Program-made: the position numbers and the translations under genes
Notes under the pieces: model-generated
What the model saw: only the letters and a program-made list of their open reading frames with translations
Database searches by the model: none
Told to the model about the DNA's origin: nothing
Shown: in pieces, positions 5,335-50,072 of the stretch
How the letters are laid out: each line of letters opens with the position of its first letter
How positions within the stretch are numbered: the first letter of the stretch is position 1
Virus record (IMG/VR): IMGVR_UViG_3300022744_000020
Location: 186,001 to 250,000 of that record
Direction: 5' to 3' (one strand)
Length of the DNA: 64,000 bases

Positions 5335-5348
5335 TCCTGAGAAAAGGA
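5335..5348 (+). promoter_or_regulatory. RBS hairpin TCCT-GAGAAA-AGGA
   Basis: One of five covarying copies; ATG 6 nt downstream. Confidence 0.65.
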
Positions 5349-5354
5349 TTTGAA

Positions 5355-5924
5355 ATGAATTTGCCCGAAATGACAATGGCCGGTGAGATTTACCGTAAAG
5401 TGCATGAGAATCCAGGTATCTGGGTTTCCAAGTCTGGGAGTTTCTGGCGTGAGGACAAGAAGTTATTCATGACCCCAGTCACCAAGGTAAATTTCGCGCT
5501 GGTAACCCCTCGGAATTATTGGTACGTCAACTATCGGCTGACCGGGGAGCGACCCGTCAGTTTGTTGATCAATCGCCTGATGGCAAAAGCCTGGAAGGAG
5601 AAGCCGGTGGGGTTGAAAGAATACGATACGCTCCCGGTAATTTACCGAGTAAACCCGACAACGCTAGAGTTGGCGTTGGATTTGACCAACATGGCTTACT
5701 GTGTCGTCAAAAATTACTACTACAATTTTGTTTGTGGTCAGGTAACGATTGGAGAGAAAGTCATCGAGTTCAAAAGCAATCGCCACTTGGGATTAATTTT
5801 AGAAGAGAACAAAATCTCTTTGAACAGAGAACAAATTCGAACCCTGTTCAGAAGAAAAAGAACAGAACACCCCACCATAAAGGGGTTTTCTCTGACGTAC
5901 TACGACGAAAACAAAGTCGCGTAA
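5355..5924 (+). CDS. Degenerate NUMOD4/HNH homing-endonuclease-like protein
   Basis: WVSKSG, YWYVNY, INRLMAKAW and TNMAY align by eye to the HNH family pattern; HNH histidines absent. Confidence 0.45.
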   Translation: MNLPEMTMAGEIYRKVHENPGIWVSKSGSFWREDKKLFMTPVTKVNFALVTPRNYWYVNYRLTGERPVSLLINRLMAKAWKEKPVGLKEYDTLPVIYRVNPTTLELALDLTNMAYCVVKNYYYNFVCGQVTIGEKVIEFKSNRHLGLILEENKISLNREQIRTLFRRKRTEHPTIKGFSLTYYDENKVA

Positions 5925-5951
5925 TCATTTCAACCACCACGAGGATCAGCC

Positions 5952-6623
5952 ATGCATCAGCTCAACACCCCTAGTCAGCAATTCCACCACGTCGGAGCGG
6001 TTGAAATTCGCCCCAATAATTTTGCTGTCACGTTGCCGTTCGAGATTCTTGATCGGAAAATAAATATCAGTACCCATAAAAGTCTCACGTGGGGAGAGAT
6101 TCATTCGCTTCTCAGTAAGCACACGCGTGAAGGTCTGCGCATGTTCTTGGTGACGACCAAGGGACAAAGTCATCTCGTCTTGGAGACGGACAAGAACATG
6201 AATCCAACGGATGCCCGGAAATTGGAGCAGGAGGTCTACCTGCTTTTGACCAAGGCCATTGGAAGAGATGAGAATTCCAACGACGTGAAGTCCAGCCGGA
6301 GTAGAAACCTCACCGTGTTCGGTTTCTATCACGGAGATGATGCTGTGAAGTTTCTCAACGCTTACCGGTATTTTCGTGAGCCGGCCGAGCCGTTGAAGAT
6401 CTCTGAAACTGGCATGATGATGTTCTATGCCGGAGAACTCCCTGTGTTGGTCAATGCAAAGAACATCAACTACATCCGTCAAGATCAGCGAAGCAGTGAG
6501 TCTGTCGTGATCTCCTTCATGTCGAGTTCGGTTTTTGTGACCTACCCGTCGGAAGAAATCGCTGAGAAAGTGATCCTGAAAGCACAAGAGTACCTGATGG
6601 GTGTGGTCCCCACCCTTTCGTAA
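5952..6623 (+). CDS. Hypothetical protein, paralog family A
   Basis: C-terminal VTYPSEEIAEKV motif shared with the next two genes. Confidence 0.8.
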   Translation: MHQLNTPSQQFHHVGAVEIRPNNFAVTLPFEILDRKINISTHKSLTWGEIHSLLSKHTREGLRMFLVTTKGQSHLVLETDKNMNPTDARKLEQEVYLLLTKAIGRDENSNDVKSSRSRNLTVFGFYHGDDAVKFLNAYRYFREPAEPLKISETGMMMFYAGELPVLVNAKNINYIRQDQRSSESVVISFMSSSVFVTYPSEEIAEKVILKAQEYLMGVVPTLS

Positions 6624-6648
6624 AACTTCTCATTTCTCGGAGTAAAAA

Positions 6649-7338
6649 ATGGATTATTCTAGCCTTACCTCGTGCCAGAAGCATTACCGTCCTATCAACG
6701 TGAACCCTTCGGACGAGCACAGTCGCGAGAAGGCCGTCTACCTGGGTAGTCACTTCTATTTGACGATTCCAAAGATTGTCGATGTTGTGATGACTTTGGA
6801 TCGACCCGCGGGCTTCTCTTTCAGTTTCACCGAACTGGAAGGAGAATGTTACATGCATTTCGAGTTCTCGAAAGAGGACTCTCCGGTCGAAATCTCGAAC
6901 CATTTGAAAGAGTTCGAGCGGAAAGCAATCGAAGCGGCCGGCGGGGCTCACAAAGTCGGTCGGATTTATCAGAAAAAGATCGGCAACTCGGTGGTGTTTG
7001 GATTCTCCATCGATAGTGCCGCGATTGATTTCTTGAGGACGTATCTGTTCTTTCGTGAGGTGGACAAGGTTCCAAACGGTAAGGAGCCGAAAGCTCGCCC
7101 GGTTGTGAAGTTCAAGAACGGATTCGTCACCCTCTTTGATGGCCTGACCTCCCTTATGTGCCGTTTGTCGGCAATTACCTACGTCTACTCGGGTGCGGGG
7201 GAAAGGACAGAAGACTCGGCGCGAACGATTTACCTGGGTGTGGATGGGGTGCCCCAGCACCTGAAGTTCCCCAGCCCAGAGATCGCGGAGACCGTCGTTT
7301 CCGTGGTTCAGAACAACCTCATGGAAATCGACAATTAA
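6649..7338 (+). CDS. Hypothetical protein, paralog family A
   Basis: C-terminal LKFPSPEIAETV. Confidence 0.8.
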   Translation: MDYSSLTSCQKHYRPINVNPSDEHSREKAVYLGSHFYLTIPKIVDVVMTLDRPAGFSFSFTELEGECYMHFEFSKEDSPVEISNHLKEFERKAIEAAGGAHKVGRIYQKKIGNSVVFGFSIDSAAIDFLRTYLFFREVDKVPNGKEPKARPVVKFKNGFVTLFDGLTSLMCRLSAITYVYSGAGERTEDSARTIYLGVDGVPQHLKFPSPEIAETVVSVVQNNLMEIDN

Positions 7339-7347
7339 GGAGCCAAC

Positions 7348-8058: not shown

Positions 8059-8075
8059 CTGCCGGCAAAAAGATA

Positions 8076-8113
8076 CTGACAGCCACCAGCCATGAAAGGC
8101 TGGTGGCTGTCAG
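8076..8113. terminator. Bidirectional terminator between convergent genes
   Basis: 16-bp perfect stem CTGACAGCCACCAGCC-ATGAAA-GGCTGGTGGCTGTCAG. Confidence 0.8.
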
Positions 8114-12989: not shown

Positions 12990-14054
12990 ATGACCGAATT
13001 CAAGTATCTCAATCGCAAAACTGCTGAACTTCTTTTTGGAACTGACTTTCTAATACCTGGTCAGACCAACTCCGAACTCCATCGTGGGATTATAGCCACC
13101 AGGCAATCTCTTCAAATGCTGTCGGTTCAATTAGGGCAGCACTTCCCGATGCTCGGCACGATCTCTTTGTCGGACGCAAACATGTCCATCTTCCCAGAGG
13201 TTTCCGAGCAAGAGCAAATCAAGAACTTTCTCAAAGGAAAGAACGGGTACGGTGATGAAATTCGTCGTTTCATTGCTCGAATGGTTTGCTTCAGTGGACC
13301 TGTGTCGGAACGAATTGTGGATGACCGGATCATTTACCATCTGGGAACTCATCCGGAACTGACGGTTCTGAATAAAGAGTTTCTTTTGGCGTACCCCAAT
13401 AACCTGCCCCTATTGAGGATAAAGAATCCCAAGGATCTGAATGTCGCTTTCTTCCGATGGTTTCGTCAGCGTGCTCACAGTTTGAAAGTTCCTGTTTTCA
13501 AATCCGTTCGTTACCCGTTGGTGTCGATGGAGTTTGAACCCAATGGCGTTGGACACGCTATTCAGCACGAGCTAGAAGGTGTATTCACGTATGAAAACGA
13601 ATCGAGTATTCCGGACGATTTACTAGATGAAATAACCACCCACATTAGTAACCACGTTGGTCTGGGTCCGGATCTTGAACTTACGATGGAGGCCGTTCAG
13701 AGCACGCTGATTCAAATCTTGAACGAAGGAGTGAAATCTAAAGAATCACTGTATCTCTACGGTCAGGACCATCGCACTGAATCAAATCGCAGTCTGATTA
13801 TCAGTAAATTGAAAGAAGGTACGGTAATAGAAATACTTCTTAGCTATTACGACTATAACGGCCGAGAGGTTGGGTACAGACACGTCTGCGAAATTGGGGA
13901 GGAGTTGACGGAAGAAAAGAAAACGGAGGCTCTAAGCTGGATCAAAGATTGCTTTGAAAAGATCAAATCCCCCACCGATCAGTGGTTTGTCGCGGATGTC
14001 CTGATGAGGCGATACAAAGAACTGACCAAAGAAATCAAGTCCCAGCAGGAGTGA
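12990..14054 (+). CDS. Hypothetical protein
   Basis: 354-aa ORF. Confidence 0.8.
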   Translation: MTEFKYLNRKTAELLFGTDFLIPGQTNSELHRGIIATRQSLQMLSVQLGQHFPMLGTISLSDANMSIFPEVSEQEQIKNFLKGKNGYGDEIRRFIARMVCFSGPVSERIVDDRIIYHLGTHPELTVLNKEFLLAYPNNLPLLRIKNPKDLNVAFFRWFRQRAHSLKVPVFKSVRYPLVSMEFEPNGVGHAIQHELEGVFTYENESSIPDDLLDEITTHISNHVGLGPDLELTMEAVQSTLIQILNEGVKSKESLYLYGQDHRTESNRSLIISKLKEGTVIEILLSYYDYNGREVGYRHVCEIGEELTEEKKTEALSWIKDCFEKIKSPTDQWFVADVLMRRYKELTKEIKSQQE

Positions 14055-14067
14055 TTCCATCTTTTTT

Positions 14068-14094
14068 CAGTCACATATAACCTATGTGAATCGA
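14068..14094 (+). promoter_or_regulatory. Phage promoter-like motif
   Basis: CAGTCACATATAACCTATGTGAATCGA, near-identical copy at 38763; contains the TCACAT/ATGTGA inverted repeat. Confidence 0.65.
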
Positions 14095-14116
14095 AGCAAT
14101 CCTTGCTTCAGCCCAC

Positions 14117-14130
14117 TCCCGAGAAAGGGA
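14117..14130 (+). promoter_or_regulatory. RBS hairpin TCCC-GAGAAA-GGGA
   Basis: Covarying copy; ATG at 14138. Confidence 0.65.
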
Positions 14131-14137
14131 ATTAATC

Positions 14138-14443
14138 ATGGCAATGATGCGAATCACTTTTGGAAGACTGATGTTTTCCGTTCACGAAAAAGAGGCTGAA
14201 AAGTTAAATAAGGAGTTTATAGCGGCTGGTGGTGATCGCGCCGCCCTGGCAATACTCGTGAACAACGGCTGGAAGTTTCGTGTCATTCCAGCCCGACCAA
14301 ACCCTGGGGAGTTGGACCTCCCGCATGACTGGAAAGATATAGTCGAGGTAATTTCTCAGCCTCGCTTATCTTTGTGGGAAAGGTGCGTCCGACCCGAACC
14401 GATCCCCTTCCCCTCGTTTTCTGAATTTTCTCAGTTCTCCTGA
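14138..14443 (+). CDS. Hypothetical protein
   Basis: First gene after the promoter motif. Confidence 0.75.
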   Translation: MAMMRITFGRLMFSVHEKEAEKLNKEFIAAGGDRAALAILVNNGWKFRVIPARPNPGELDLPHDWKDIVEVISQPRLSLWERCVRPEPIPFPSFSEFSQFS

Positions 14444-14451
14444 TAAAAGGA
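14438..14451 (+). promoter_or_regulatory. RBS hairpin TCCT-GATAAA-AGGA
   Basis: Variant copy overlapping the upstream stop; ATG at 14460. Confidence 0.55.
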
Positions 14452-14459
14452 CCTTTCTC

Positions 14460-15029
14460 ATGAACGCCCTGAATATTCTTTCTCTCTCCTCGGTGACGCC
14501 TGCTGAACTCGATCAATGCATGCTCGAGAACCTTGGCGTCGTTGACAAAATCACCCTCGCGGACGGTACCTGCCTGAAATACTGGAACGAGTTCATTCCC
14601 AACCTCCTGCCCGGTGGTTGGTCCGTCCGTTGGGTTAATGTGAAGCCGACTTCGGCAGACCTGGTGCTTGTCCCAAACACCGGTCGTGCTCGTCACGTTC
14701 GGAAACAAGGGTTTGTCCAGCACTGGATGAAGAAGGGTCTTGACGCCGTCGAGGCTGAAGCACTCTACGAATGCCGCACGCAATACAAAATCGAGGTGGC
14801 CGACAAAGCCATTGAGATTTGGATCGCTCCTGAAAATGAGAAGCTCTATAATGCCTACCACGCACTATGCGACCATCCGGGATCGTACGGCTCTGGCTCC
14901 GGTCGCTCCGGCTGGCGCATGAAGAATCTCGATTCGCTCAAGGGAGCGGATCTACACGAGTGGTCCGCACAGCGAGAACTGGCATTGGTGATTTGCATTC
15001 GGGCACTTCAAGAAGCCAATGCCAACTGA
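14460..15029 (+). CDS. Hypothetical protein
   Basis: ORF in operon. Confidence 0.75.
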   Translation: MNALNILSLSSVTPAELDQCMLENLGVVDKITLADGTCLKYWNEFIPNLLPGGWSVRWVNVKPTSADLVLVPNTGRARHVRKQGFVQHWMKKGLDAVEAEALYECRTQYKIEVADKAIEIWIAPENEKLYNAYHALCDHPGSYGSGSGRSGWRMKNLDSLKGADLHEWSAQRELALVICIRALQEANAN

Positions 15030-16614: not shown

Positions 16615-16654
16615 ACATATATCATTCAACTGAACCAACCCAGACGAAAAAGGA
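16615..16654 (+). promoter_or_regulatory. Promoter-like motif plus ACCCAGACGAAAAAGGA leader
   Basis: ACATATATCATT at 16615; leader 17-mer also at 642 and 35820. Confidence 0.6.
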
Positions 16655-16660
16655 ATTCCC

Positions 16661-24336: not shown

Positions 24337-24420
24337 ATGTCATTACTTAATTTTTTGGCCCTAACCAACCAGATTGGGAAAGAGGAATGTAAATCGAGAC
24401 GCATTCCAGGTTTTTACAAC

Positions 24421-24481
24421 CGTATATAACTCTCATGAATCAAGTACGACTGTCGTGTTTGAACAACTCCCGAGAAAGGGA
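24421..24481 (+). promoter_or_regulatory. Promoter-like motif, 5' hairpin and RBS hairpin TCCC-GAGAAA-GGGA
   Basis: CGTATATAACTCTCATGAATC; stem TCAAGTACGA/TCGTGTTTGA; RBS hairpin at 24468-24481. Confidence 0.65.
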
Positions 24482-24488: not shown

Positions 24489-24803
24489 ATGGAAAAGAAA
24501 GAAATTACCTATTTGGTCTACGCCCAAATAGGTGGAGGTTGGTCGCGACAGCCGCGATACATCCCCACCTCCACACGAAGCGATATGGTCGCTTCTTGGT
24601 GCCTGGTCTTTGGACCGGACACCGCCCGGTTGAATCCGGAGGGGGATGTAGAGGTGGAGACCAACAAGGTCTTCCAAGTTGCCGACTATGTCGGCTTGAC
24701 CAATCTGCTCGGTGAAGCAGATTGGCACCCCAGGACCAAAGTAGGTCTGGGGAACTTCATCGAAAGCTTGATCAGCTTATCGGTGCGCGGCATCTCGCCA
24801 TAA
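24489..24803 (+). CDS. Hypothetical protein
   Basis: ATG 7 nt after GGGA. Confidence 0.75.
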   Translation: MEKKEITYLVYAQIGGGWSRQPRYIPTSTRSDMVASWCLVFGPDTARLNPEGDVEVETNKVFQVADYVGLTNLLGEADWHPRTKVGLGNFIESLISLSVRGISP

Positions 24804-26125: not shown

Positions 26126-28894
26126 ATGTTTGAAATTTTGAGATCACTTGCTGGTATTCTCGATGTTCGAATCAACCGAAATGTCGTCACTGTCTCCGGA
26201 GTGAAGAAAGCCACAATCGAAGGCGGTATGAAGAAAGTGTTTGGCTCCGATAAGATCGCGGCCCACATTTTCAAAATCAAAAGCAACTCCTTCTCTTTTC
26301 AGGAGTGGTTCCTGCCAGATGTGGCTTTCGCTCTGCAGGAGATTGTCAACTCTCCCAAGTCTTACGCCGATCACAAAAGGACTTGTAAGCAAATTCTCAA
26401 TCAGCTTTACGAGAAGACATGGCTCGGTCGGATCAATACTGAAGCACCAAAGCGGCTTGACCGCTCCAAGCTTCGAGACATGGTCTTCACCCCTTTGGAT
26501 TTCCAGGAAGAGTTCTTCGACTATTTTGAGAAGAACGTCTACGCGTACAACCTGAAGGGTTTTCTTTTTGCTGGTGCGGCTGGTTCGGGCAAAGCCCAAC
26601 CAGACTCGGCACTCGTGAAAATCCCCAACGGATGGAAACCCATAGGGGAGATCAGAACCGGAGATTTAGTGGTCACGCCCGACGGAGCGCATGCTGTTGT
26701 TTCAGGTGTGTTTCCACAGGGAATGAAAAAAATCTACGAGATTTCCACGGTCGATGGTCGTCGCACTCAAGCGTGCCGTGAACACCTGTGGGAGATCATC
26801 ATTCCGGATCAGTCGATTTTCCGTGAACCGAAGGTGGTTAACACTCAGGCAGTTCTATCGCTGATCAGTTCCGGGATTCCGGTCTTTATTCCCACCACCA
26901 TTTGCTGCTCACCGACCGACATACCTCTCAGTGCAGATCCTGAGAAGTGCTCCCCAAGGGAGTTGATCGAAGCTTCATACGCCCAGAAAGAAGCCTTCTT
27001 TGTCGCTCAAGTGGGTCGAAAATATCGATACCTCAACAATTGGGCTCGAGTAACTGGCCAAGACCGAGAAGATTTCATCGCCCTCGTCAGGTCTTTTGGC
27101 GGGGTGATTGGACCAATCACGGAAGAAATGAGCCCGGACATTCTTCCGTACTACTTCGACTCTCTTGTTGAAATTGAGAACGTGCTTCTTGCCGAGGATC
27201 AATACGCTCGCTGCATCATGGTCGAAGATCCTCGTCATTTGTACGTGACCGATCAATACATCGCCACGCACAATACGTTTACCTCTTGCGCCCTGGCTCA
27301 TTGCTCTGGATCCGACAAGATCATCGTTGTTTGCCCGAACAACGCTTTGGATCGGGTTTGGAAAGATTCGGCTCTGACGGTGTTCAAGCAACCACAATCG
27401 GTCTGGATTAGTGACGGGAAAACCCCCTTTACTGGTAAAGAAAGATTCCTGGTATGTCACTATGAATGGCTGAGTAAGCTTCGAGCCAATCTGGACAAGA
27501 TTAGCTATCAGCGACTTACCGTCATTCTCGATGAATCGCACAACCTGAATGAGGCAGATAGCGGAAGAACCCAGAAATTCATTTCCCTGTGCGAGGAAGT
27601 GGACGCGGCTGAGGTCATCTGGCTTTCCGGCACTCCCATCAAAGCGCTTTCGACGGAAGCGATTCCCCTGATAAGATGTATCGACCCCTTGTTCACCCCG
27701 GAGGTGGAAGACATTTTCAAGGCCATCTTCCGAGGAGAAAACAACAAAGCGATTTCGATTCTCAAAAATCGAATCGGTCTGGTGTCGTTCAAGGTCGCCA
27801 AAGATCGTCTGGGTCTGAAAGAGCCACTCTTCACCAATTACAAGGTTGCGTTCCCGGGCGCTGAAGAGTTTACCCTCACCAAGATCCGGGAGAAGATGAC
27901 GGCCTTCATCCAACAGCGAGATGTCTACTATAAGTCTCGAGAAAAGGCCGATCTGGCTTACTACCAGAAAATCTTGGATCAGCACGCTGCAAAGCTGACG
28001 ACTCGTGAAGAAAAGGCGGAATTCGATCAATACGTTCGCAACGCGAACATGATACGCAAAACCCAAGGCATGGGCTGTTCAGACGAAATGAAGGCAGCCA
28101 ACCTCTATGAGCTGCGCAACATCATGCCTGGACTTAGCGCCGAGGATCGCATCAAGTTCAAGGAATCGAAGACGATCTACAAGTACCTCACCCTGAAGAT
28201 TCAAGGAGAATGCTTGGGTCAAATTGTTGGGCGTACCCGGATCGCTTGTCATGTTGAGTTGGCCAAACAGATCAAGTATGCTCCGATCCTTGAGTCGACT
28301 GAGAAGAAGACGGTTGTTTTCTCGTCATTCGTGGACGTGCTAAAAGCGGCTGAAGTGGAGCTGCAAGCTCAGCAGTATTCTCCAATGCTTGTTTACGGAG
28401 AAACCACCAGTAAACTGGCCCAGATAGTACAGCAGTTTGGAGAAGACGAATCAGTGAACCCGTTGGTGGCGACCTATGCTTCGTTGTCTACTGCGGTTCC
28501 TTTGATCATGGCCGACACCATGATTCTGATCGATGTGCCTTTCCGAGACTACATCCTTCAGCAAGCCGTGTCTCGAATCCATCGACTCGGACAGGTCAAC
28601 GACACACACATCTTCACGATCGTGCTGGATACTGGCAACGAGCCGAACATCTCTACCCGAACGGTGGACATTCTGCGCTGGTCACAACAGCAAATCGAAT
28701 CTATCTTGGGCATCAAGTCTCCTTTTGAAATCAAGGACGGGGAAGAGATCGCACTCGAAGCCATGGAAAGTCTGGATGATATCGACCTGACGCAAGTGGT
28801 CGATCCGTTCTTTGCTGGACTCAAGCAGATGGATCAATTCATCGATCCGGACGTGGTTGAAGTCTCTGTTGAAAACACCTATCTCTCTTGGTAA
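26126..28894 (+). CDS. SNF2/SF2 helicase precursor containing an intein
   Basis: GAAGSGK|T (split by the intein), ILDESH, LSGTP, VVFSSF, QAVSRIHRLGQ. Confidence 0.92.
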   Translation: MFEILRSLAGILDVRINRNVVTVSGVKKATIEGGMKKVFGSDKIAAHIFKIKSNSFSFQEWFLPDVAFALQEIVNSPKSYADHKRTCKQILNQLYEKTWLGRINTEAPKRLDRSKLRDMVFTPLDFQEEFFDYFEKNVYAYNLKGFLFAGAAGSGKAQPDSALVKIPNGWKPIGEIRTGDLVVTPDGAHAVVSGVFPQGMKKIYEISTVDGRRTQACREHLWEIIIPDQSIFREPKVVNTQAVLSLISSGIPVFIPTTICCSPTDIPLSADPEKCSPRELIEASYAQKEAFFVAQVGRKYRYLNNWARVTGQDREDFIALVRSFGGVIGPITEEMSPDILPYYFDSLVEIENVLLAEDQYARCIMVEDPRHLYVTDQYIATHNTFTSCALAHCSGSDKIIVVCPNNALDRVWKDSALTVFKQPQSVWISDGKTPFTGKERFLVCHYEWLSKLRANLDKISYQRLTVILDESHNLNEADSGRTQKFISLCEEVDAAEVIWLSGTPIKALSTEAIPLIRCIDPLFTPEVEDIFKAIFRGENNKAISILKNRIGLVSFKVAKDRLGLKEPLFTNYKVAFPGAEEFTLTKIREKMTAFIQQRDVYYKSREKADLAYYQKILDQHAAKLTTREEKAEFDQYVRNANMIRKTQGMGCSDEMKAANLYELRNIMPGLSAEDRIKFKESKTIYKYLTLKIQGECLGQIVGRTRIACHVELAKQIKYAPILESTEKKTVVFSSFVDVLKAAEVELQAQQYSPMLVYGETTSKLAQIVQQFGEDESVNPLVATYASLSTAVPLIMADTMILIDVPFRDYILQQAVSRIHRLGQVNDTHIFTIVLDTGNEPNISTRTVDILRWSQQQIESILGIKSPFEIKDGEEIALEAMESLDDIDLTQVVDPFFAGLKQMDQFIDPDVVEVSVENTYLSW
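26594..27274 (+). mobile_element. Class 3 intein (227 aa) with decayed endonuclease region
   Basis: Starts AQPDSA, ends IATHN/T; block B REHLW, block F ARCIMV, block G ATHN give the W-C-T triplet. Confidence 0.9.
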
Positions 28895-31748: not shown

Positions 31749-31952
31749 GTGATGAGCACTGACTACAAACTCCTCTGCCGCGAACACAACGTGGCTATCG
31801 ATGCCTGCAGCCGACAAGCGTTCGGGGTCTGTATCGCTTCGGATGGTCACAACCTCGCGAACTTCATCATCGACCATCAAAGCTGCAAGTTGGAAGTAGC
31901 TCGTGAAGGCTCCGATGAATTTCAAGACACTCCTGACTACCAAGGAAGCTGA
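31749..31952 (+). CDS. Small hypothetical protein
   Basis: AGGAG RBS. Confidence 0.65.
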   Translation: MMSTDYKLLCREHNVAIDACSRQAFGVCIASDGHNLANFIIDHQSCKLEVAREGSDEFQDTPDYQGS

Positions 31953-34280: not shown

Positions 34281-34319
34281 AGTCTGATTTATCACCCCCA
34301 ACTCAGGAGAAAAATCCTA

Positions 34320-34703
34320 ATGGACGACATGCAATTGGAAGCCTACAAGGCCGCTTTGAGGCTTGAAGCGGAATCGGTCGCCGAGAACGCCGTCGGCGCC
34401 TACCTTCATCAGAAGTACGATCTGATCAAGGAGATCCAGGATGAGGTTCTGGGTCAGAACCCGGATTGGTTTGAGATCCTGGATGGATTTGAGTTTCCTC
34501 GCAAGAAGGAGATCGAAGCAGTACACGAGGCCATCGACCAGGTCCTCAGTGGCTACGGCATCACTTCTGAAGGCCGTCCGAAGTATTCGTTCTTCCGGAC
34601 TCTTCCGGAGTTCGAGTTCTTCCCGGCCGAGAAAGATTCCTTCGGCTGGCTCATTGGTGGATGTCGGCGATTGAGTGATGACATCGTGGCTTACTACGGC
34701 TGA
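34320..34703 (+). CDS. Hypothetical acidic protein
   Basis: AGGAG RBS. Confidence 0.75.
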   Translation: MDDMQLEAYKAALRLEAESVAENAVGAYLHQKYDLIKEIQDEVLGQNPDWFEILDGFEFPRKKEIEAVHEAIDQVLSGYGITSEGRPKYSFFRTLPEFEFFPAEKDSFGWLIGGCRRLSDDIVAYYG

Positions 34704-35812: not shown

Positions 35813-35843
35813 TTCAATCACCCAGACGAAAAAAGGATTCCCC

Positions 35844-38701: not shown

Positions 38702-38730
38702 GAAAAGGGGGCTCGTCCCCCTTTTCTTTT
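38702..38730 (+). terminator. Terminator
   Basis: GAAAAGGGGG-CTCGT-CCCCCTTTTC plus T run. Confidence 0.8.
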
Positions 38731-38762
38731 TACTAATTTAAAAACCATTTTCCAGATTTTTA

Positions 38763-38790
38763 CAGTCACATATAACCAATGTGAATCGAG
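38763..38790 (+). promoter_or_regulatory. Phage promoter-like motif
   Basis: CAGTCACATATAACCAATGTGAATCGAG, near-identical to 14068. Confidence 0.65.
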
Positions 38791-38840
38791 TACAAATCGT
38801 GTATTTGGTCACCATCAACCTTGACTCAATGGAGTTCCGA

Positions 38841-39143
38841 ATGCCCTTCCTCGCCCAAATCGCTGGCATCACCCTTCAAATCGTGCAGGTCTGCACACCG
38901 ACTCCGGAGTATCTGGCAGCAAAAGCCGCTCAGATGCCGCAAGCCCAGATCATGATGATCCAGCCCGCCAAGTGCGTCAACACGGGTCATTCCCTGATTG
39001 GCAAAAAGTTCTACTCCCCGGGCATTAGCGACCAATCGATGCGCACCTGCAAGCTTCAGCAAGATTACTGGAAGTGGGTTGCTTCAAAGCAAGGAGTGAC
39101 CATCACCAGTTGGTGCCTGATTGGCTCAGTCACGGCGAAATGA
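38841..39143 (+). CDS. Hypothetical protein
   Basis: GGAG 6 nt before ATG 38841. Confidence 0.65.
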   Translation: MPFLAQIAGITLQIVQVCTPTPEYLAAKAAQMPQAQIMMIQPAKCVNTGHSLIGKKFYSPGISDQSMRTCKLQQDYWKWVASKQGVTITSWCLIGSVTAK

Positions 39144-39174: not shown

Positions 39175-39208
39175 AGAATAGGGGTTCGCCCCTATTCTTT
39201 TTTTTTTT
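39175..39208 (+). terminator. Rho-independent terminator
   Basis: AGAATAGGGG-TTCG-CCCCTATTCT plus T run. Confidence 0.9.
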
Positions 39209-45729: not shown

Positions 45730-48700
45730 ATGAAGCTCTCCACCTACCTCAAGAACTACGCTCCATCCCTGAAGATTGTGTTTTTCAAAGACTCCCCCTC
45801 TTGGGAAGACGAGTCCGCTGAAACAAAACTCACTTTTCAGAATTTGGGCCTTTTAAACCCTCAAGACGGGATCAAAATGGATGACTTCCTGAAAAAGAAT
45901 CAGTGTTGGGGTCTGTTTTTCAGCATGCAAGGGCGTCCGCGAGATACAGACGCCAGCACGATTCTGGGGGCTTTCCAATTCGGTCAGAATCCGGAGATCC
46001 TGCGCCGCTTGCCGAACGAGTGTTTGCTTTTCTGCGATGTTGAAATCACTCAGGAAGATCTCGACATCTTTGATGAGACACTGAAGCAGTCGGGAACCAA
46101 CATCGAGAACAACTGGTTTTCCACGAGGATCAAAGATCCGATGTTCGTGGATTGCCCGGAGCCACCAACCACCTGCGTGCTTCCCTCGGCTCCGGACGAG
46201 ATGATGTTGGCGGCATACATGCTGCGCTCTGCCGCTCGTCTCGGCGTGAAGCTTCTGAGAAGTGAGTCGGACCCGGACAGTATTCTGGTATTCCGTCCCA
46301 ATAGCTGTCCGGTCGATCCGATACATGTGCTGTTGAAAGCATGCGAGCTGAATTTCGACAAGAAAGAAGACCTCATTTTGTCACAGTTCGAGCTCACAAC
46401 GGGGAAGAGATTGACCCGTAACGAACTGGATCAATCTCCGATCTATTGTTTCACCGACGTCTCAATCACCGACGAGGACCTGATCGATGCTCGAAGGAAA
46501 ATGCCACAACTCTTGGCAGAAGATCGTCCGATCCTGGATTGGTTCATGGAAACTGTGAGCGGTGAGGTTGCCAAACCAGAAACCGTGAACAGTACCCCCG
46601 CCCCGGCTCCTCTTCTGAAAGATCTCATAATCGAAACCCATAAGAAAATCATAAAAGAGATCCTTCCCGCACCAACCGAAACTCGGGAAAAGGCTCTTGA
46701 TGAGGCACTGAAGAAAATGCATGAACGCGTCTTTGAAAAGGCCAGTCTTGCAAATGCATCGGAATGCATCCAAGGCCAAATCCCGTCGAAACAATCCGCG
46801 GAAGAAAACCCCATGAAAACTACGAAGCTCAGCGAATACATGGCCTTTGAAATCGGCCGCCTTGGTGGGATTGTCCTCCCGTCCGGGATCCACATGTACC
46901 CGTTTGTGGTCATGCTGCCGATGAGTATTCCGGTCATCGATGATCCGATCTGGTCCTGGCTCAATATGCCGATGGCTGGGTTTTGCAATCGGACTGCGTT
47001 CGGCAAGATATTTCAGGCGTTCCGAAGCCTCCCAGTAGGTCGATCCATCCTCCCTCCGTTTGGGAATTCTCCGCGATACGTCTTCGAGGAGGTGCTGATC
47101 ACCAAGCAAGATCTGGACATCGCTCAGGACGACACTCAGAAAATCGCACAGCGATATGGTCGTTACATGCGGCAATACTTCGTCCAGAAACCCAACACAT
47201 ATGCAGCAGCCCCAATGACGAATCCGTTCTTGTGCCAGCCCTCTGGCTTCATCCCGAGAAGTCCCTTTTCTCCTGAAAGCATTGCCCTCCCTCATTCTGA
47301 ATGGGAAGATTGTCGTCGTAGGATCAACCCCCAACCAGAACCCAGCATGTATCTCTCCGAGTATCTTGGAAAGACCCTCCACACCGTGAACGCGCCGTTT
47401 AATGTGTTGGGGTTCCCGAGCAATGGGCGCGATGCTGGACTGATTGTGAAATCGACAACAGCCATGCTAACGGCCAGCAGCGGTGTCGATCAGCAATGGA
47501 GGAACATAGTAACCAATGGCGCCTCTTGGGGCGAGAGGAACGTCAAGATCTTCGAAGCATTTCAAGTTCAGGCGTATGAGGGGCAGTTTGATTCCCTCCA
47601 TACGCGATACGCTGGGCCTTCCTCCAACATCTTTCTGGCTTTCCGTGATATCAAGATCACTCAGGCGGACATCGAACTCGCTCGTCAAGCGATGCGGCAG
47701 TTCACGGGGGTTCAAGCTACTCACCCGTGGCTTGGACTGGATCTTCCACTCAGTCCGACTTCTCAATTTACTGGAGTCTCCGAACCCATGAAAACCAACC
47801 CTTTCCCGCGCATGGGGATGTATGAAACAAAAATCCACACCCTGGGCTCGTACCTTCGTCGGTCGCTGGAGCGCTCGACGTCCCAATTGTCCGTCATCCA
47901 GCTTCGTCAACTGGGTACCGCGGCAATTGTCCAGCATGGTGCCCTGAGTGGAGAAAACGCGTATCTGTGGCCAGCCTGGATGGGGGTAATTACTCTTTCA
48001 GACGCATCGTCACTGTACTGTAATCCTATTTTCCGGGCTTTCTTACACGTTATCCCTGATACCAGCCGCAACTGGATGCGCATGAGTGGTAATCATGATC
48101 TGGTCTTGGGGTATTTTCACGATTACGTGATCACTCAGAAAGACCTCGAGCATGCGCGACAATACATGACCCTGGATGGGAAGCCTCATCCGTGGTTAAA
48201 AATGGACCTCGAAGAACTCGAACCCGCGAAGCTCGGACTCTACCAGTATCTCCGTCGCGAGGTGGAAAACTGCAACAATCGGTTCCGTGTTGTCCTGCGC
48301 ACCAATCAGGATCAGTCAGTTGGAGTGATCTGCTACGACTATGACAAGGAAGACGATGGGGATGGATCGGCTTACAACTGGGCCATCGCTGTTTACAACT
48401 ACCGGCAGCAAAATCGCCATGATTCCGTCATCTTCAACATGTTCCTGAACGGACTGAGAACGAAAGACTTCTACAACGAACGCCCGAAGAGTCGCGCTGA
48501 TTTCATCTTCCTCAACGCCGACATCAGCCAGTTGGACATTGACAAAGCACGTCAGGTTTATCAAGAGGTGACCAAAATGACTCAGGTACATCCCTGGCTT
48601 ATTTCGGACCTCGTCAAGGGCGTGGTTTTCACCGGACAGCCGATTGCGCCGTCACAAGCTGGTTATGTTCCCATCCCGCCAACGCAGCCGGGACCGCAGT

Positions 48701-49068
48701 TCGTGACGGAAAGTGGCTGGAAGCCGATCCCAATCCCGGAATGGGCGCGGACCATCCGAGAAGAAGCCATGGATCAAGCATTTCCTCATCGTCGGGATCA
48801 GTCCAATTTGGCAGAGGCGGCAAAGGTCCAAGCTATCTTTGGTCTGGTTGAAAACCTGAGTCATGGCGCACGATGCGTGCTGAGGACCCTGAAAGAAGTC
48901 GGGGCCACTGCTGCTAGTTCGATCATTGAGACCCATGGACTGAAGGCTTTGGAGGAAGCCAGGTTTGTTCTGCGATTCCGCAGCCAAGGAGAAAGTCACG
49001 TGTCGATCAATAAAGACGGTGTGATAGCACTGAAGATGCTGAAGGTCCTCTTTCCGAATGAGGGATAA
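45730..49068 (+). CDS. 1112-aa protein with six divergent tandem domains and a C-terminal winged-helix-like domain
   Basis: Six L[SAGY]xY[LM] ... F.D..IT..D[LI]..A units. Confidence 0.85.
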   Translation: MKLSTYLKNYAPSLKIVFFKDSPSWEDESAETKLTFQNLGLLNPQDGIKMDDFLKKNQCWGLFFSMQGRPRDTDASTILGAFQFGQNPEILRRLPNECLLFCDVEITQEDLDIFDETLKQSGTNIENNWFSTRIKDPMFVDCPEPPTTCVLPSAPDEMMLAAYMLRSAARLGVKLLRSESDPDSILVFRPNSCPVDPIHVLLKACELNFDKKEDLILSQFELTTGKRLTRNELDQSPIYCFTDVSITDEDLIDARRKMPQLLAEDRPILDWFMETVSGEVAKPETVNSTPAPAPLLKDLIIETHKKIIKEILPAPTETREKALDEALKKMHERVFEKASLANASECIQGQIPSKQSAEENPMKTTKLSEYMAFEIGRLGGIVLPSGIHMYPFVVMLPMSIPVIDDPIWSWLNMPMAGFCNRTAFGKIFQAFRSLPVGRSILPPFGNSPRYVFEEVLITKQDLDIAQDDTQKIAQRYGRYMRQYFVQKPNTYAAAPMTNPFLCQPSGFIPRSPFSPESIALPHSEWEDCRRRINPQPEPSMYLSEYLGKTLHTVNAPFNVLGFPSNGRDAGLIVKSTTAMLTASSGVDQQWRNIVTNGASWGERNVKIFEAFQVQAYEGQFDSLHTRYAGPSSNIFLAFRDIKITQADIELARQAMRQFTGVQATHPWLGLDLPLSPTSQFTGVSEPMKTNPFPRMGMYETKIHTLGSYLRRSLERSTSQLSVIQLRQLGTAAIVQHGALSGENAYLWPAWMGVITLSDASSLYCNPIFRAFLHVIPDTSRNWMRMSGNHDLVLGYFHDYVITQKDLEHARQYMTLDGKPHPWLKMDLEELEPAKLGLYQYLRREVENCNNRFRVVLRTNQDQSVGVICYDYDKEDDGDGSAYNWAIAVYNYRQQNRHDSVIFNMFLNGLRTKDFYNERPKSRADFIFLNADISQLDIDKARQVYQEVTKMTQVHPWLISDLVKGVVFTGQPIAPSQAGYVPIPPTQPGPQFVTESGWKPIPIPEWARTIREEAMDQAFPHRRDQSNLAEAAKVQAIFGLVENLSHGARCVLRTLKEVGATAASSIIETHGLKALEEARFVLRFRSQGESHVSINKDGVIALKMLKVLFPNEG

Positions 49069-49084
49069 AATCCCCTGATGGAAT

Positions 49085-49135
49085 GCTACTACCCTGGACG
49101 CCAAAAGCGTCCAGGGTAGTAGCTCCTTCTTTTTT
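49085..49135 (+). terminator. Long terminator hairpin, CAAAA loop
   Basis: GCTACTACCCTGGACGC-CAAAA-GCGTCCAGGGTAGTAGC plus T-rich tail. Confidence 0.85.
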
Positions 49136-49189
49136 ATATCGTTCCGGCATTTTGTACAAATCCACCACACCGATCGCTGGAGCTTACCC

Positions 49190-49975
49190 ATGATTTCCTT
49201 GCAACTCGCTTCAAAGAAAGAAGCTTTTGATTTCTTCCCTGGCTTTGAAGACATCTGGCCCTCCAAATGGAGCGAGCAAGCCATGGTCGCTACAACCGAC
49301 TGGACTCTTGATGAAGCCGATGGAGAGATTTTCTACATTCTTAACGACGGCAAGAAGATTGGAATTACTGGCTGGTGGCCGTTATCCGAATCAATGGCCG
49401 GGCTTCGCTGGCATGGCGTCATCCCTGAATGCCGAGGTCATGGATTTGGAAAGCAAGCGCTTATTTACCTTACCAATCGTCTTGCTTCAAACTACAAAAA
49501 ATTGATCGAAGTCACCATGAGTGATGCACCGATCAAGTTCTTTCGTTCTTTCGGATTCGAAGAAATTACGGACCCGATCTTGATTGAATTTACCAAGAAA
49601 TTGGTAGGGGATTACGGACATCGTTTTTTGGAATTTCGATTGGAGGAGAAGCGGATCTCGTACAAAGACTACGACTATCCGTGGGATTGTGTCAGCGTGT
49701 TTAAGCTGACCACAGAACATTGGGGCCCCTCTTATCGGCTGGATCAATACTGGCGTGGGTTGGGTCCTGGCCAGAATCTTTTTGTGGAAGTTTCATATTT
49801 CAAACTAGGAACTGAGAATAACGACCACAAGGTTTTGGTTCGTGGTGGGGACGCCGGTGGAATGGAGCGTACGTTCCCAGGACGGGCGGCAGCAAAAGAG
49901 TTCTTTGATAAAATTGTGGAGTTGCCAAGGGTTAACGGAGCAGAACTCAAAGCCCTAGGCTTCACCTACATTTAA
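49190..49975 (+). CDS. GNAT acetyltransferase fused to an unknown C-terminal domain
   Basis: WHGVIPECRGHGFGK motif A; FFRSFGF motif B. Confidence 0.8.
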   Translation: MISLQLASKKEAFDFFPGFEDIWPSKWSEQAMVATTDWTLDEADGEIFYILNDGKKIGITGWWPLSESMAGLRWHGVIPECRGHGFGKQALIYLTNRLASNYKKLIEVTMSDAPIKFFRSFGFEEITDPILIEFTKKLVGDYGHRFLEFRLEEKRISYKDYDYPWDCVSVFKLTTEHWGPSYRLDQYWRGLGPGQNLFVEVSYFKLGTENNDHKVLVRGGDAGGMERTFPGRAAAKEFFDKIVELPRVNGAELKALGFTYI

Positions 49976-50006
49976 GATGGTGTAGTCACATTCCAAAAAT
50001 TCATGG

Positions 50007-50072
50007 TCATATATACTCTCATTGAATCGCAAAGCAATTTCGCATAACGATTCACCCTCCTGAGAAAAAGGA
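50007..50072 (+). promoter_or_regulatory. Promoter-like motif, 5' hairpin and RBS hairpin TCCT-GAGAAAA-AGGA
   Basis: TCATATATACTCTCATTGAATC; GAATCG/CGATTC stem; RBS hairpin at 50058-50072. Confidence 0.65.

What the first reader, a model, noticed from the sequence alone, without database searches (positions are those of the whole stretch)
5335..50072. Covarying UCCY-GAGAAA-RGGA hairpin covering five ribosome-binding sites
Seen in sequence: TCCT-GAGAAA-AGGA (5335), TCCC-GAGAAA-GGGA (14117), TCCT-GATAAA-AGGA (14438), TCCC-GAGAAA-GGGA (24468) and TCCT-GAGAAAA-AGGA (50058), each 6-8 nt before an ATG. The closing pair switches between T-A and C-G, a compensatory change, while the purine loop is conserved and the 3' arm is the Shine-Dalgarno sequence. 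Four of the five lie on the first gene behind a promoter motif. Established: lambdoid boxB hairpins have a similar short stem and G-A-rich loop bound by N, and phage translational operators often sequester the SD. Inference: a shared operator for a phage- or host-encoded RNA-binding protein that coordinates a regulon of small early genes.
Basis: partly seen in the sequence, partly recalled or inferred. Interest (0 to 1): 0.68.

Follow-up and report, generated by a model that had tools for sequence, protein, structure and literature searches.

The report
Ribosome-site-masking hairpin in jumbo-phage early leaders
A 14-15-base RNA hairpin whose second arm is the ribosome-binding sequence recurs in front of about a dozen small early genes of an uncultivated 270-kb phiKZ-like phage; it is real and under selection, most likely a built-in brake or coupling device for translation, and nothing shows that a dedicated protein reads it.

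Summary
The five sites exist exactly as described, 6-8 nt before an ATG. The window is part of a 270,383-bp phiKZ-like jumbo phage that encodes its own RNA polymerase. Genome-wide, 12 sites have UCCY, a GA..A purine loop and RGGA. All lie on the + strand before a start codon, and all have a complementary Y-R pair.

Nine follow a repeated early-type promoter cassette with a 5' stem-loop; four are internal genes of operons. The element is fixed relative to the start codon, not the promoter.

In a relative at 64-84% protein identity, the arms changed at 1 of 32 positions, against 26 of 77 in flanks and spacers. A more distant relative keeps the promoter and a mini-hairpin at the same place. There the stem sequence usually differs and a separate ribosome-binding sequence follows.

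Best reading: a cis-acting hairpin that masks the Shine-Dalgarno sequence, within a modular early leader. It would tune translation and couple internal genes to the gene upstream. The protein-operator idea is untested. boxB, RegA, RegB and CsrA membership fail. I rate it a new variant of a known kind, of moderate interest.

The parts
5286..5325 (+). Early-type promoter cassette, weaker copy (CTCCA, T-rich spacer, ACATATATTC...GAAGTC). It lies just after a terminator hairpin at 5255-5285.
   Evidence: (nhmmer E 5.5e-5)
5335..5348 (+). Hairpin II, UCCU-GAGAAA-AGGA. The 3' arm is the only Shine-Dalgarno sequence; 6 nt to the ATG at 5355.
   Evidence: (pair probability 0.93-0.97)
5355..5924 (+). 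First gene behind the cassette, 189 aa, with a weak match to an HNH-endonuclease family.
   Evidence: phrog_59, E 0.0015
14048..14092 (+). Early-type promoter cassette (TTCCA-N11-TCACATATAACCTATGTGAATC).
   Evidence: E 3.7e-10; D1
14093..14109 (+). 5' stem-loop I (GAAGCAA-TCC-TTGCTTC). The orthologue in phage C reads GAAGACA-ATTCC-TGTCTTC, a compensatory change.
14117..14130 (+). Hairpin II, UCCC-GAGAAA-GGGA; 7 nt to the ATG at 14138. Identical in phage C, while the flank and spacer diverged.
   Evidence: (pair probability 0.9-1.0)
14138..14443 (+). First gene, 101 aa, no family match. Its stop codon TGA (14441-14443) lies inside the next hairpin.
14438..14451 (+). Hairpin II at an internal gene, UCCU-GAUAAA-AGGA, overlapping the upstream stop codon; 8 nt to the ATG at 14460. 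This geometry suits translational coupling.
14460..15029 (+). Second gene of the operon, 189 aa, no family match.
24396..24441 (+). Early-type promoter cassette.
   Evidence: (E 3.2e-8)
24442..24460 (+). 5' stem-loop I (AAGTACGAC-TGT-CGTGTTT).
24468..24481 (+). Hairpin II, UCCC-GAGAAA-GGGA; 7 nt to the ATG at 24489. The phage C orthologue reads CCCC-GAGAAA-GGGA, so the outer pair is lost there.
24489..24803 (+). First gene, 104 aa, at the head of the operon that runs into the SNF2-type helicase (26126-28894).
31931..31946 (+). Looser variant, UCCU-GACUACCA-AGGA (8-nt loop); 7 nt before the ATG of an 83-aa ORF.
34305..34318 (+). Inverted variant, AGGA-GAAAAA-UCCU, with the Shine-Dalgarno sequence in the 5' arm. 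It lies just before the ATG at 34320 and behind a weak promoter-like site. May be chance.
38743..38787 (+). Early-type promoter cassette without the UCCY element.
   Evidence: (E 2.4e-10)
38823..38836 (+). A different Shine-Dalgarno-masking hairpin in that leader, GACUC-AAUG-GAGUU (Shine-Dalgarno GGAG); 4 nt before the ATG at 38841.
   Evidence: (minimum-free-energy structure)
49982..50028 (+). Early-type promoter cassette.
   Evidence: (E 1e-7)
50024..50053 (+). 5' stem-loop I (GAATCG...CGATTC).
50058..50072 (+). Hairpin II, UCCU-GAGAAAA-AGGA (7-nt loop); 6 nt to the ATG at 50079. Orthologues have loops GATAAA (phage C) and GAGAAAAA (a 97% relative) with the stem unchanged.
50079..50360 (+). 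First gene, 93 aa. It has a paralogue at genome 168242 that also sits behind a hairpin II.

Best explanation
The element is a real RNA mini-hairpin under purifying selection. It has four Watson-Crick pairs (UCCY/RGGA), probably extended by a G.A closure, and a purine-rich loop of 6-7 nt. It is the last module of a standard 5' leader used by this phage's early-type promoters. The order is promoter, 5' stem-loop I, a variable linker of 9-40 nt, hairpin II whose 3' arm is the only Shine-Dalgarno sequence, 6-8 nt, then AUG.

It most likely acts in cis by masking the Shine-Dalgarno sequence. At promoter-proximal genes it would set a threshold for 30S binding and so damp or tune translation of small early proteins. 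At internal genes it would make initiation depend on a ribosome that terminates on the upstream cistron and melts the hairpin (translational coupling). Together with stem-loop I it may also shield the leader from endonucleases.

Shown here: recurrence, anchoring to start codons, predicted folding, conservation of both arms against diverged flanks, and a stop codon inside one hairpin. Inferred: that the promoter is a virion-RNA-polymerase early promoter, that the hairpin forms in vivo, and any effect on translation or stability.
For: 1. Enrichment and position. There are 12 GA-loop sites plus one variant, all 6-13 nt before start codons on the + strand. The distance to the promoter varies from 9 to 40 nt, but the distance to the start codon is 6-8 nt. 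Of 117 RGGA Shine-Dalgarno sites, 17 have an upstream complement, against 2.7 expected.

2. Folding. Predicted energy is -3.4 to -5.4 kcal/mol for the bare hairpin. With flanks it is -4.2 to -6.4 at 37 C and -6 to -9 at 20 C. Pair probabilities are 0.6-1.0 in 9 of 11 leaders. The Shine-Dalgarno sequence is more often predicted paired in motif genes than in other genes (0.83 against 0.64, p = 0.002).

3. Selection. In four orthologous leaders of phage C (64-84% protein identity), the arms changed at 1 of 32 positions and the loops at 3 of 25. Flanks and spacers changed at 26 of 77 (Fisher p = 4.5e-4). The 5' arm alone changed at 1 of 16 (p = 0.03).

4. Pairing. The closing pair is U-A in 8 and C-G in 7 distinct sequences, never U-G or C-A. 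The loop ends G...A become A...U in the orthologue L042, giving a possible fifth pair. The leader at window 38823 masks a different Shine-Dalgarno sequence (GGAG) with a different arm, GACUC/GAGUU.

5. Coupling geometry. The upstream stop codon 14441-14443 lies inside hairpin 14438-14451. Three other internal sites lie 14-32 nt after an upstream stop.

6. Loop variability. The loop varies in sequence and length while the stem is kept. That fits a structural role.
Against: 1. The hairpin is weak at 37 C, so its effect on initiation could be small.
2. Phage B, the more distant relative, mostly places its mini-hairpin (GCC..GGC or GGGC..GCCC) upstream of a separate Shine-Dalgarno sequence. The conserved feature across the lineage may therefore be 'a hairpin next to the ribosome-binding site' rather than masking as such.
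3. G1, A2 and A6 of the loop are nearly invariant within this genome. That is more than a stem alone requires and leaves room for a reader protein.
4. One orthologue lost the outer pair.
5. The copies are paralogous modules, so the statistics within this genome overstate independence.
6. No transcript, structure-probing or translation data exist for this phage. The only run labelled RNA (X4) was available as contigs only.
Confidence: 0.5

Rival explanations
1. Shared translational operator. A phage-encoded or host RNA-binding protein or nuclease would recognise the hairpin (stem plus GA..A loop) on about a dozen early mRNAs. It would switch their translation off, or on, as infection moves on from the early phase. 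This is functionally like T4 RegA or RegB, or the coat-protein operators of RNA phages.
For: Loop positions G1, A2 and A6 and the preceding C are nearly invariant in this genome. The element is restricted to one promoter class and its operons. It also occurs on internal genes, as an operator would. The arms are conserved in phage C. T4 gives a precedent for regulon-wide control at early ribosome-binding sites (PMC3014915).
Against: No candidate protein was found. RegA, RegB and CsrA families are absent. The 93-aa early protein that I folded has a small alpha/beta fold with no significant match to a solved structure. The loop sequence and length drift between orthologues, and the loop is AAAAAT in phage B. 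Phage B uses unrelated stems at the same position. The G...A loop ends have a purely structural explanation.
Confidence: 0.25
2. No function of the hairpin as such. A strong ribosome-binding module of about 30 nt (A-rich tract, AGGA/GGGA, spacer, ATG) has been copied among early genes by duplication or recombination. The 5' arm and the two 'covarying' states are inherited baggage from two founder copies.
For: Pairs of sites are nearly identical over 27-33 nt, including the first codons (D8). Only one pair varies, and only between two states. phiKZ early genes share a similar A-rich GTAAAAAGGAA Shine-Dalgarno motif without a tight upstream arm.
Against: The flanks and spacers of orthologous sites diverged by 34% while the 5' arm stayed nearly intact. 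Sites with different loops, spacers and upstream leaders all keep a complementary arm, 12 of 12 against 46% in the background. An unrelated masking hairpin occurs at 38823. The excess of anti-Shine-Dalgarno arms is position-specific.
Confidence: 0.12
3. RNA thermometer. The short Shine-Dalgarno-masking stem would melt with temperature, so that early-gene translation follows the temperature of the freshwater or wastewater host.
For: Predicted stability changes from about -6 to -9 kcal/mol at 20 C to -4 to -6 at 37 C. The design resembles simple single-hairpin Shine-Dalgarno thermometers (my own knowledge). The phage comes from freshwater and wastewater metagenomes.
Against: Any short hairpin shows this trend. 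There are no mismatches, G.U pairs or U-tracts of the kind typical of fourU or ROSE elements. There is no evidence on host temperature range.
Confidence: 0.07
4. DNA-level operator, or a boxB-like processivity signal. TCCY-N6-RGGA would be an inverted repeat bound by a dimeric DNA-binding protein downstream of early promoters. Alternatively it would be a nascent-RNA hairpin that loads an antiterminator onto the polymerase.
For: The half-sites are about 10 bp apart centre to centre. The element lies 30-70 nt downstream of promoters. The string resembles lambda boxB (CCCUGAAAAAGGG; my own knowledge).
Against: The position is fixed relative to the start codon and variable relative to the promoter. 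The element is present at internal genes with no promoter. Loop length varies from 6 to 8 nt and relatives use spacings of 3-6 nt. There is no boxA. The phage encodes its own multisubunit RNA polymerase, and phiKZ-type transcription is independent of the host enzyme (PMC7598289).
Confidence: 0.05

Closest known systems
Shine-Dalgarno-sequestering hairpins and translational coupling in polycistronic phage and bacterial mRNAs (for example the MS2/Qbeta coat-replicase region)
   Same: A local stem includes the ribosome-binding site. Stability is in the range where initiation becomes structure-limited. In one case the upstream stop codon lies inside the stem, so a terminating ribosome would open it (Qbeta precedent PMC2978339).
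   Different: Here a single very short motif (4 bp) is reused at about 13 genes and is tied to one promoter class. No long-range pairing and no start codon in the stem are involved.
MS2/PP7 coat-protein operator hairpins and the T4 gp43 operator hairpin
   Same: A small hairpin at or next to the ribosome-binding site could be bound by a protein to repress initiation.
   Different: Those are single-gene, autoregulatory operators with defined loop or bulge identity. Here there are many genes, a drifting loop and no identified binder.
T4 RegB and RegA control of early mRNAs
   Same: Regulon-wide post-transcriptional control aimed at the ribosome-binding sites of early genes (PMC3014915).
   Different: RegB needs GGAG, and secondary structure protects against its cleavage. 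RegA sites are unstructured, A+U-rich and overlap the AUG. The motif here has no GGAG in 12 of 13 sites and is structured. No RegA or RegB homologue is encoded.
Lambdoid boxB/N nut sites
   Same: A short G+C stem with a G-A-rich loop lies a few tens of nucleotides downstream of early promoters.
   Different: The stem has 4 pairs, not 5, and the loop has 6-8 nt, not a 5-nt GNRA-like pentaloop. There is no boxA. The position is locked to the start codon. The polymerase is the phage's own, not the host enzyme with Nus factors.
Early (virion RNA polymerase) promoters of phiKZ-like jumbo phages
   Same: The upstream cassette has an AT-rich block of about 10 nt (ATATAA/ATATAT) preceded by a T-rich tract. 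It is repeated before operons of small genes of unknown function, in a genome that encodes split beta/beta' subunits (PMC7598289, PMC8244752). phiKZ early leaders share an A-rich AAAAAGGA Shine-Dalgarno motif.
   Different: The phiKZ leaders that I inspected lack the tight upstream arm and the 5' stem-loop. This lineage adds a conserved TGAATC block and two hairpins.

Membership tests
Lambda-type boxB (N-utilisation hairpin) | A 5-bp stem closing a 5-nt GNRA-like loop (GAAAA/GAAGA) | tested here: not met
   The stem has 4 Watson-Crick pairs. The loop has 6-8 nt and variable sequence.
Lambda-type boxB (N-utilisation hairpin) | A boxA element (CGCUCUUUA-like) a few nucleotides 5' of the hairpin | tested here: not met
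   No boxA within 60 nt upstream at up to 2 mismatches in 11 of 13 sites. The two weak matches are unrelated strings.
Lambda-type boxB (N-utilisation hairpin) | Acts on host RNA polymerase with N and Nus factors; position set by the transcription unit, not by a ribosome-binding site | tested here: not met
   The element is 6-8 nt from start codons and 9-40 nt from the promoter block. It is also present without a promoter. The phage has its own beta/beta' genes. I did not search for an N-like protein.
T4 RegB target sites | GGAG/U in the ribosome-binding site, an A-rich 3' context, an unstructured site, and a RegB nuclease encoded by the phage | tested here: not met
   GGAG is absent near 12 of 13 sites. 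The site is predicted to be structured. PF10715 is absent from the genome.
T4 RegA operators | An unstructured A+U-rich site overlapping the AUG, and a RegA protein encoded by the phage | tested here: not met
   The motif is G+C-stemmed and ends 6-8 nt before the AUG. PF01818 is absent.
CsrA/RsmA binding sites | A GGA motif presented in the loop of a short hairpin, often overlapping the Shine-Dalgarno sequence | tested here: not met
   GGA lies in the 3' arm, not the loop. No phage CsrA is encoded. A host CsrA cannot be tested because the host is unknown.
Shine-Dalgarno-sequestering cis hairpin / translational coupling element | The Shine-Dalgarno sequence base-paired with a nearby upstream complement, in a predicted stable local structure | tested here: met
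Shine-Dalgarno-sequestering cis hairpin / translational coupling element | Both arms conserved or co-varying relative to their flanks | tested here: met
   Arms changed at 1 of 32 positions against 26 of 77 in flanks and spacers. The Y-R pair is always complementary. The sample is small and the copies are related.
Shine-Dalgarno-sequestering cis hairpin / translational coupling element | A measurable effect of the stem on initiation, or on dependence on upstream translation | not testable with these tools
   Needs reporters, toeprinting or structure probing.
RNA thermometer (fourU/ROSE type) | The Shine-Dalgarno sequence paired through weak or non-canonical pairs that melt in the physiological range | tested here: inconclusive
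   Stability falls with temperature, but the pairs are canonical and no U-tract or bulge is present.
phiKZ-type virion-RNA-polymerase early promoter (the upstream motif) | A conserved AT-rich block of about 10 nt near -10 with a T-rich tract upstream, repeated before early operons of a phage that encodes its own RNA polymerase | tested here: met
   Twelve strong copies, all on the + strand. Beta and beta' fragments are encoded. The description is in PMC7598289 and PMC8244752. The transcription start site and timing were not testable.
Rfam families | A match to any curated RNA family | tested here: not met
   No match at gathering score in the window. Only a chance-level hit appeared at E 0.28.

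The most novel reading that the evidence does not exclude
The hairpin is the common operator of a post-transcriptional switch in a nucleus-forming-type jumbo phage. A still unidentified phage protein, or a host factor co-opted early, would read the UCCY-GA..A-RGGA hairpin on about a dozen early mRNAs. It would shut off, or license, their translation as a block. This would be a RegA/RegB-like early-to-middle switch of independent origin, in a phage family whose early mRNAs are made by an injected polymerase.
Probability: 0.2. Interest if true: 0.75.

Novelty: new variant of a known kind. Interest (0 to 1): 0.45.

Why it matters
Gene expression in phiKZ-like jumbo phages has been mapped mostly at the level of promoters. 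How translation of the first-wave mRNAs is controlled is largely unknown. This lineage shows a compact, modular early leader: promoter, 5' stem-loop, then a hairpin that masks the Shine-Dalgarno sequence. The leader is reused genome-wide and conserved in relatives.

If the hairpin sets translation or coupling, it is a simple built-in way to dose potentially toxic host-takeover proteins. If a protein reads it, it defines a new early regulon switch. In either case the cassette is a ready marker for predicting early genes in uncultivated relatives, and a compact part for expression control.

Tried and rejected
- Close relatives in curated phage genomes: none by megablast, and only short RNR matches by blastn. 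At protein level the helicase is about 40% identical to PhiPA3/201phi2-1.
- IMG/VR scans. The promoter string gave one unrelated hit, and the extended promoter pattern gave none. The hairpin string gave 16 unrelated coding-sequence hits, for example a nuclease motif. The helicase peptides gave none.
- Metagenome scan with the promoter pattern. It gave useful contigs of phage B. It also gave chance hits (L033, L035, L038, L041, L046, L048) that I set aside. L038 and L041 come from a gut-metagenome assembly; they are microbial contigs, not human DNA, and I did not pursue them.
- L030/L031 (helicase 55% identical) belong to a lineage with a different leader motif and were not used.
- Sequencing runs. 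No run is clearly RNA, and all were available only as assembled contigs. No transcript starts or expression could be read. The variant table was truncated, so absence of changes inside the hairpins could not be established.
- RNAalifold on stem-loop I gave no consensus structure, because the stems are out of register in an ungapped alignment. The evidence for stem-loop I therefore rests on single-sequence folds and orthologue comparison.
- MAFFT misplaced the loops of 7-8 nt. I counted pairs on the 16 sequences with 6-nt loops only. Left out were window 50058, window 31931 and L053.
- Candidate reader protein. RegA, RegB and CsrA profiles are absent. The 93-aa early paralogue family folds confidently (pLDDT 86) into a small alpha/beta domain with no significant PDB match. 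Nothing points to RNA binding.
- No tubulin (PhuZ) Pfam match was found. Nucleus formation is therefore not shown for this phage, and I call it 'phiKZ-like' only on the helicase and RNA polymerase evidence.
- Pfam and PHROG scans of ten downstream proteins gave no assignments, apart from one weak HNH hit and one sub-threshold DUF945 hit.

Full report
**1. The observation**

A degenerate search finds TCCTGAGAAAAGGA at 5335, TCCCGAGAAAGGGA at 14117 and 24468, and TCCTGATAAAAGGA at 14438. It expects 0.02 chance matches. The variant with a 7-nt loop is at 50058. Each lies 6-8 nt before an ATG that opens an ORF of 93-189 codons.

**2. What genome this is**

The window is bases 186001-250000 of a 270,383-bp virus record judged 98% complete. 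It has no close relative among sequenced phages. Its SNF2-type helicase is about 40% identical to those of PhiPA3, 201phi2-1 and other phiKZ-like jumbo phages. The genome carries fragments of RNA polymerase beta and beta' genes. No tubulin profile match was found. I therefore treat it as a phiKZ-like, RNA-polymerase-encoding jumbo phage and do not claim a phage nucleus. Near-identical and related sequences occur in freshwater and wastewater metagenomes.

**3. The motif across the whole genome**

With no complementarity imposed, TCC[CT]-GA.A(2-5)-[AG]GGA occurs 9 times. All are on the + strand, directly before a start codon, with a complementary Y and R.

Allowing any loop of 5-7 nt gives 74 sites. 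Twelve have a GA...A purine loop and sit at ribosome-binding sites, and all twelve are complementary. One GA-loop copy inside a gene (genome 119401) is a C.A mismatch. The other 61 sites have unrelated loops, are scattered, and are complementary in only 46%.

I made a rough gene call of 281 genes, 233 of them on the + strand. On that call, 117 genes use an RGGA-type Shine-Dalgarno (SD) sequence. Seventeen of these have a perfect 4-nt complement 4-8 nt upstream. Shuffles give 2.7, and looking 10-19 nt upstream gives 2-3.

**4. Context: a modular early leader**

Twelve strong copies of one promoter-like cassette lie on the + strand, with nhmmer E-values from 1e-10 to 5e-5. The cassette reads TTCCA, 11 mostly T-rich bases, TCA(C/T)ATAT, about 8 bases, then TGAATC. 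It is often preceded by a terminator (D2).

This form, an AT-rich block near -10 with a T-rich tract upstream, is what has been described for virion-RNA-polymerase early promoters of jumbo phages (PMC7598289, PMC8244752). The genes behind the cassette are small and have no family assignment. Calling them early genes is an inference.

Directly after TGAATC most leaders have a stem-loop of 5-10 bp whose sequence differs from copy to copy. I call this stem-loop I. Then comes a variable linker, then the element under study (hairpin II), then 6-8 nt, then the start codon.

- Nine of the twelve strong cassettes carry a UCCY...RGGA hairpin.
- A tenth (window 38823-38836) masks a GGAG SD sequence with a different arm, GACUC-AAUG-GAGUU.
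- Weaker promoter-like sites carry further variants: UCC-GAAAAA-GGA, UCCU-GUUA-AGGA, and an inverted AGGA-GAAAAA-UCCU.
- Four hairpins sit on internal genes with no promoter. At window 14438 the stop codon of the upstream gene is bases 4-6 of the motif. At the other three the upstream stop lies 14-32 nt before it.

From the conserved promoter block the hairpin is 9-40 nt away. From the start codon it is 6-8 nt away, and 13 nt in the one case where a second SD sequence intervenes. The element therefore belongs to the ribosome-binding site, not to the promoter.

**5. Does it fold?**

ViennaRNA gives -3.4 (U-A type) and -5.4 kcal/mol (C-G type) for the bare 14-mer. With dangling flanks it gives -4.2 and -6.4 at 37 C, and about -6 and -9 at 20 C. 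In their leader context the four pairs have probabilities of 0.6-1.0 in nine of eleven leaders. The SD sequence is predicted paired more often in motif genes than in other genes (0.83 against 0.64, Mann-Whitney p = 0.002).

The loop starts with G and ends with A in nearly all copies. That would allow a sheared G.A closure. In the phage B orthologue of genome site 168215 the loop is AAAAAT, so G...A is replaced by a potential A-U pair. This change on both sides fits a structural reading of those two 'conserved' loop bases.

**6. Relatives**

Three sets of relatives were recovered from metagenome assemblies.

*Very close relatives (96-97% protein identity).* They keep the motif. One has an extra A in the loop (L053). 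One keeps hairpin 14117 with a spacer 3 nt shorter.

*Phage C (Logan run ERR13176177; proteins 64-84% identical).* It gives four orthologous leaders.
- The stems are kept at three of the four sites.
- At the fourth the outer U-A pair is lost (CCCC...GGGA).
- Loops change from GAGAAAA to GATAAA and from GATAAA to GATAGA.
- Spacers and 5' flanks diverge strongly, including 3-nt deletions.
- Counted together, the arms changed at 1 of 32 positions and the loops at 3 of 25. Flanks and spacers changed at 26 of 77 (Fisher p = 4.5e-4 for the arms). For the 5' arm alone, which is not constrained by being the SD sequence, the figure is 1 of 16 (p = 0.03).
- Stem-loop I shows compensatory replacement: GAAGCAA/TTGCTTC becomes GAAGACA/TGTCTTC. 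At the 24468 leader the whole stem is replaced.

*Phage B (samples Ga0228699 and ERZ2725...; helicase 59% identical, syntenic).* It has the same promoter, with up to 25 identical bases, and a stem-loop I. Of nine leaders:
- one has UCCC-AAAAAU-GGGA, the orthologue of genome site 168215;
- five have AUGCC-(N)UUUA-GGCGAA, and in one of these the 3' arm reads AGC, which breaks a pair;
- one has AUGGGC-AAA-GCCCGAA, a complete swap of the stem in the same frame;
- two have nothing obvious.

In B these hairpins are followed by a separate SD sequence (GGAG, AGGA or AAGGG). This includes the true orthologue of the 24468 leader (L056). A mini-hairpin next to the ribosome-binding site is therefore conserved across the lineage. 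Its fusion with the SD sequence is typical of this phage and phage C.

The phiKZ early leaders that I inspected have the TATATTAC promoter and a conserved A-rich GTAAAAAGGAA SD motif. They have no tight upstream arm. The A-rich loop plus AGGA may thus be an old early-gene ribosome-binding feature to which this lineage added the arm.

**7. Covariation, stated carefully**

On 15 distinct sequences, three pairs never vary. The fourth is U-A in 8 and C-G in 7, never U-G or C-A, and no shuffle reaches this. But pairs of sites are near-identical over 27-33 nt, so the two states may trace to two founder modules.

Some observations are independent of that:
- the paralogous 93-aa genes carry different states, C-G at genome 168215 and U-A at window 50058;
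- the G...A to A...U change in B;
- the stem swap in B;
- the unrelated masking hairpin at 38823.

Together these make an RNA stem much more likely than not. The formal covariation evidence remains thin.

**8. Mechanism**

I commit to a cis-acting SD-masking hairpin as the last module of the early leader (confidence 0.5). The more basic claim, that it is a real RNA structure under selection, I put at about 0.8.

At first genes it would raise the energy cost of 30S binding by 4-9 kcal/mol, depending on temperature, and so tune or damp translation of early proteins. At internal genes it would couple initiation to termination upstream. Two hairpins in a short leader may also hinder endonuclease access; this last point is inference only.

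The operator hypothesis stays open at about 0.25. The near-invariant G1, A2, A6 and the preceding C in this genome are its best support. Against it stand the drifting loops in orthologues, the unrelated stems in phage B, and the lack of any candidate binder.

The other rivals are less likely. They are pure hitch-hiking of a copied ribosome-binding module, a thermometer, a DNA operator, and a boxB-like signal. The reasons are listed under each rival.

**9. Comparison with known systems**

It works like the classical SD-sequestering and coupling hairpins of polycistronic phage mRNAs. In concept it resembles operator hairpins of the MS2 coat protein or T4 gp43 type.

It is not a member of the boxB/nut class: the loop and stem size differ, there is no boxA, the position is tied to the ribosome-binding site, and the phage has its own polymerase. 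It is not a RegB target (no GGAG, structured, no RegB) or a RegA operator (structured, not at the AUG, no RegA). It is not a CsrA site (GGA in the stem) and matches no Rfam family (PMC3014915).

The upstream cassette fits the published description of jumbo-phage early promoters.

**10. Verdict**

This is a new variant of a known kind, a reusable SD-masking hairpin built into the early leader of an uncultivated phiKZ-like phage lineage. I score interest at 0.45.

The limits are plain. There are no transcript or translation data. Gene calls and start sites are my own rough ones. Relatives are few and fragmentary. The copies within the genome are not independent.

Noticed in passing
window 14048-14092, 24396-24441, 38743-38787, 49982-50028, 5286-5325; genome 64412, 64903, 121400, 134129, 168145, 168576, 269730: Twelve strong copies of a promoter cassette, all on the + strand (TTCCA-N11-TCA(C/T)ATAT-N8-TGAATC). 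Up to 25 consecutive bases are identical in a relative whose helicase is only 59% identical. This is probably the early promoter class read by the virion RNA polymerase.
   Followed up: yes
window 14093-14109, 24442-24460, 38788-38806, 50024-50053 and the other cassettes: A 5' stem-loop follows directly after the conserved TGAATC. Its sequence differs in nearly every copy, and orthologues show compensatory or whole-stem replacement. It could be a 5' stabiliser or part of initial-transcript recognition.
   Followed up: partly
L032:2130-2145, L032:6795-6810, L039 (- strand), L045:5235-5250, L056:90-107: Phage B carries a different conserved mini-hairpin at the same leader position, AUGCC-(N)UUUA-GGCGAA. 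One copy is swapped to AUGGGC-AAA-GCCCGAA. A separate Shine-Dalgarno sequence follows in each case.
   Followed up: partly
window 641-665, 16637-16660, 35819-35842: A second repeated leader motif, (C/A)ACCCAGACGAAAAA(A)GGA, lies directly before start codons. The copy at 16637 sits behind an ATATATCATTCAACTGAAC promoter-like string. It may mark another leader or promoter class.
   Followed up: no
window 51812-51834: A long perfect hairpin, CCCCTTCC-TCAAAAA-GGAAGGGG, extends to 11 bp in a 96% relative (L050). It contains the Shine-Dalgarno sequence and abuts the ATG of a lytic-transglycosylase (SLT) gene, with a T-rich run after it. It may be both a terminator for the upstream genes and a strong mask of that Shine-Dalgarno sequence.
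   Followed up: no
window 5255-5924: A gene with a weak HNH-endonuclease match and its own early-type promoter sits right after the ribonucleotide reductase genes and a terminator. This recalls free-standing homing endonucleases next to nrd genes in T4-like phages.
   Followed up: no
window 50079-50360 and genome 168242-168523 (L008:643-924): Two paralogous 93-aa early proteins (35% identical) each sit behind a hairpin II. The predicted structure is a confident small alpha/beta domain (pLDDT 86) with no significant PDB match.
   Followed up: partly
window 565-594, 38704-38733, 39177-39206, 50371-50400: A family of intrinsic-terminator-like hairpins (GGGGCTTCGGCCCC plus a T run) lies between operons, often just upstream of the promoter cassettes.
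   Followed up: no
window 14138: In relatives from two wastewater runs, the start codon of the 101-aa gene is GTG instead of ATG (A>G). A 1-nt deletion at 14458 shortens the spacer of the next gene.
   Followed up: no
genome 168145-169290 (L008): A dense cluster of two promoter cassettes and four very small genes (93, 47, 49 and 75 aa). Three of the genes carry hairpin II variants.
   Followed up: partly
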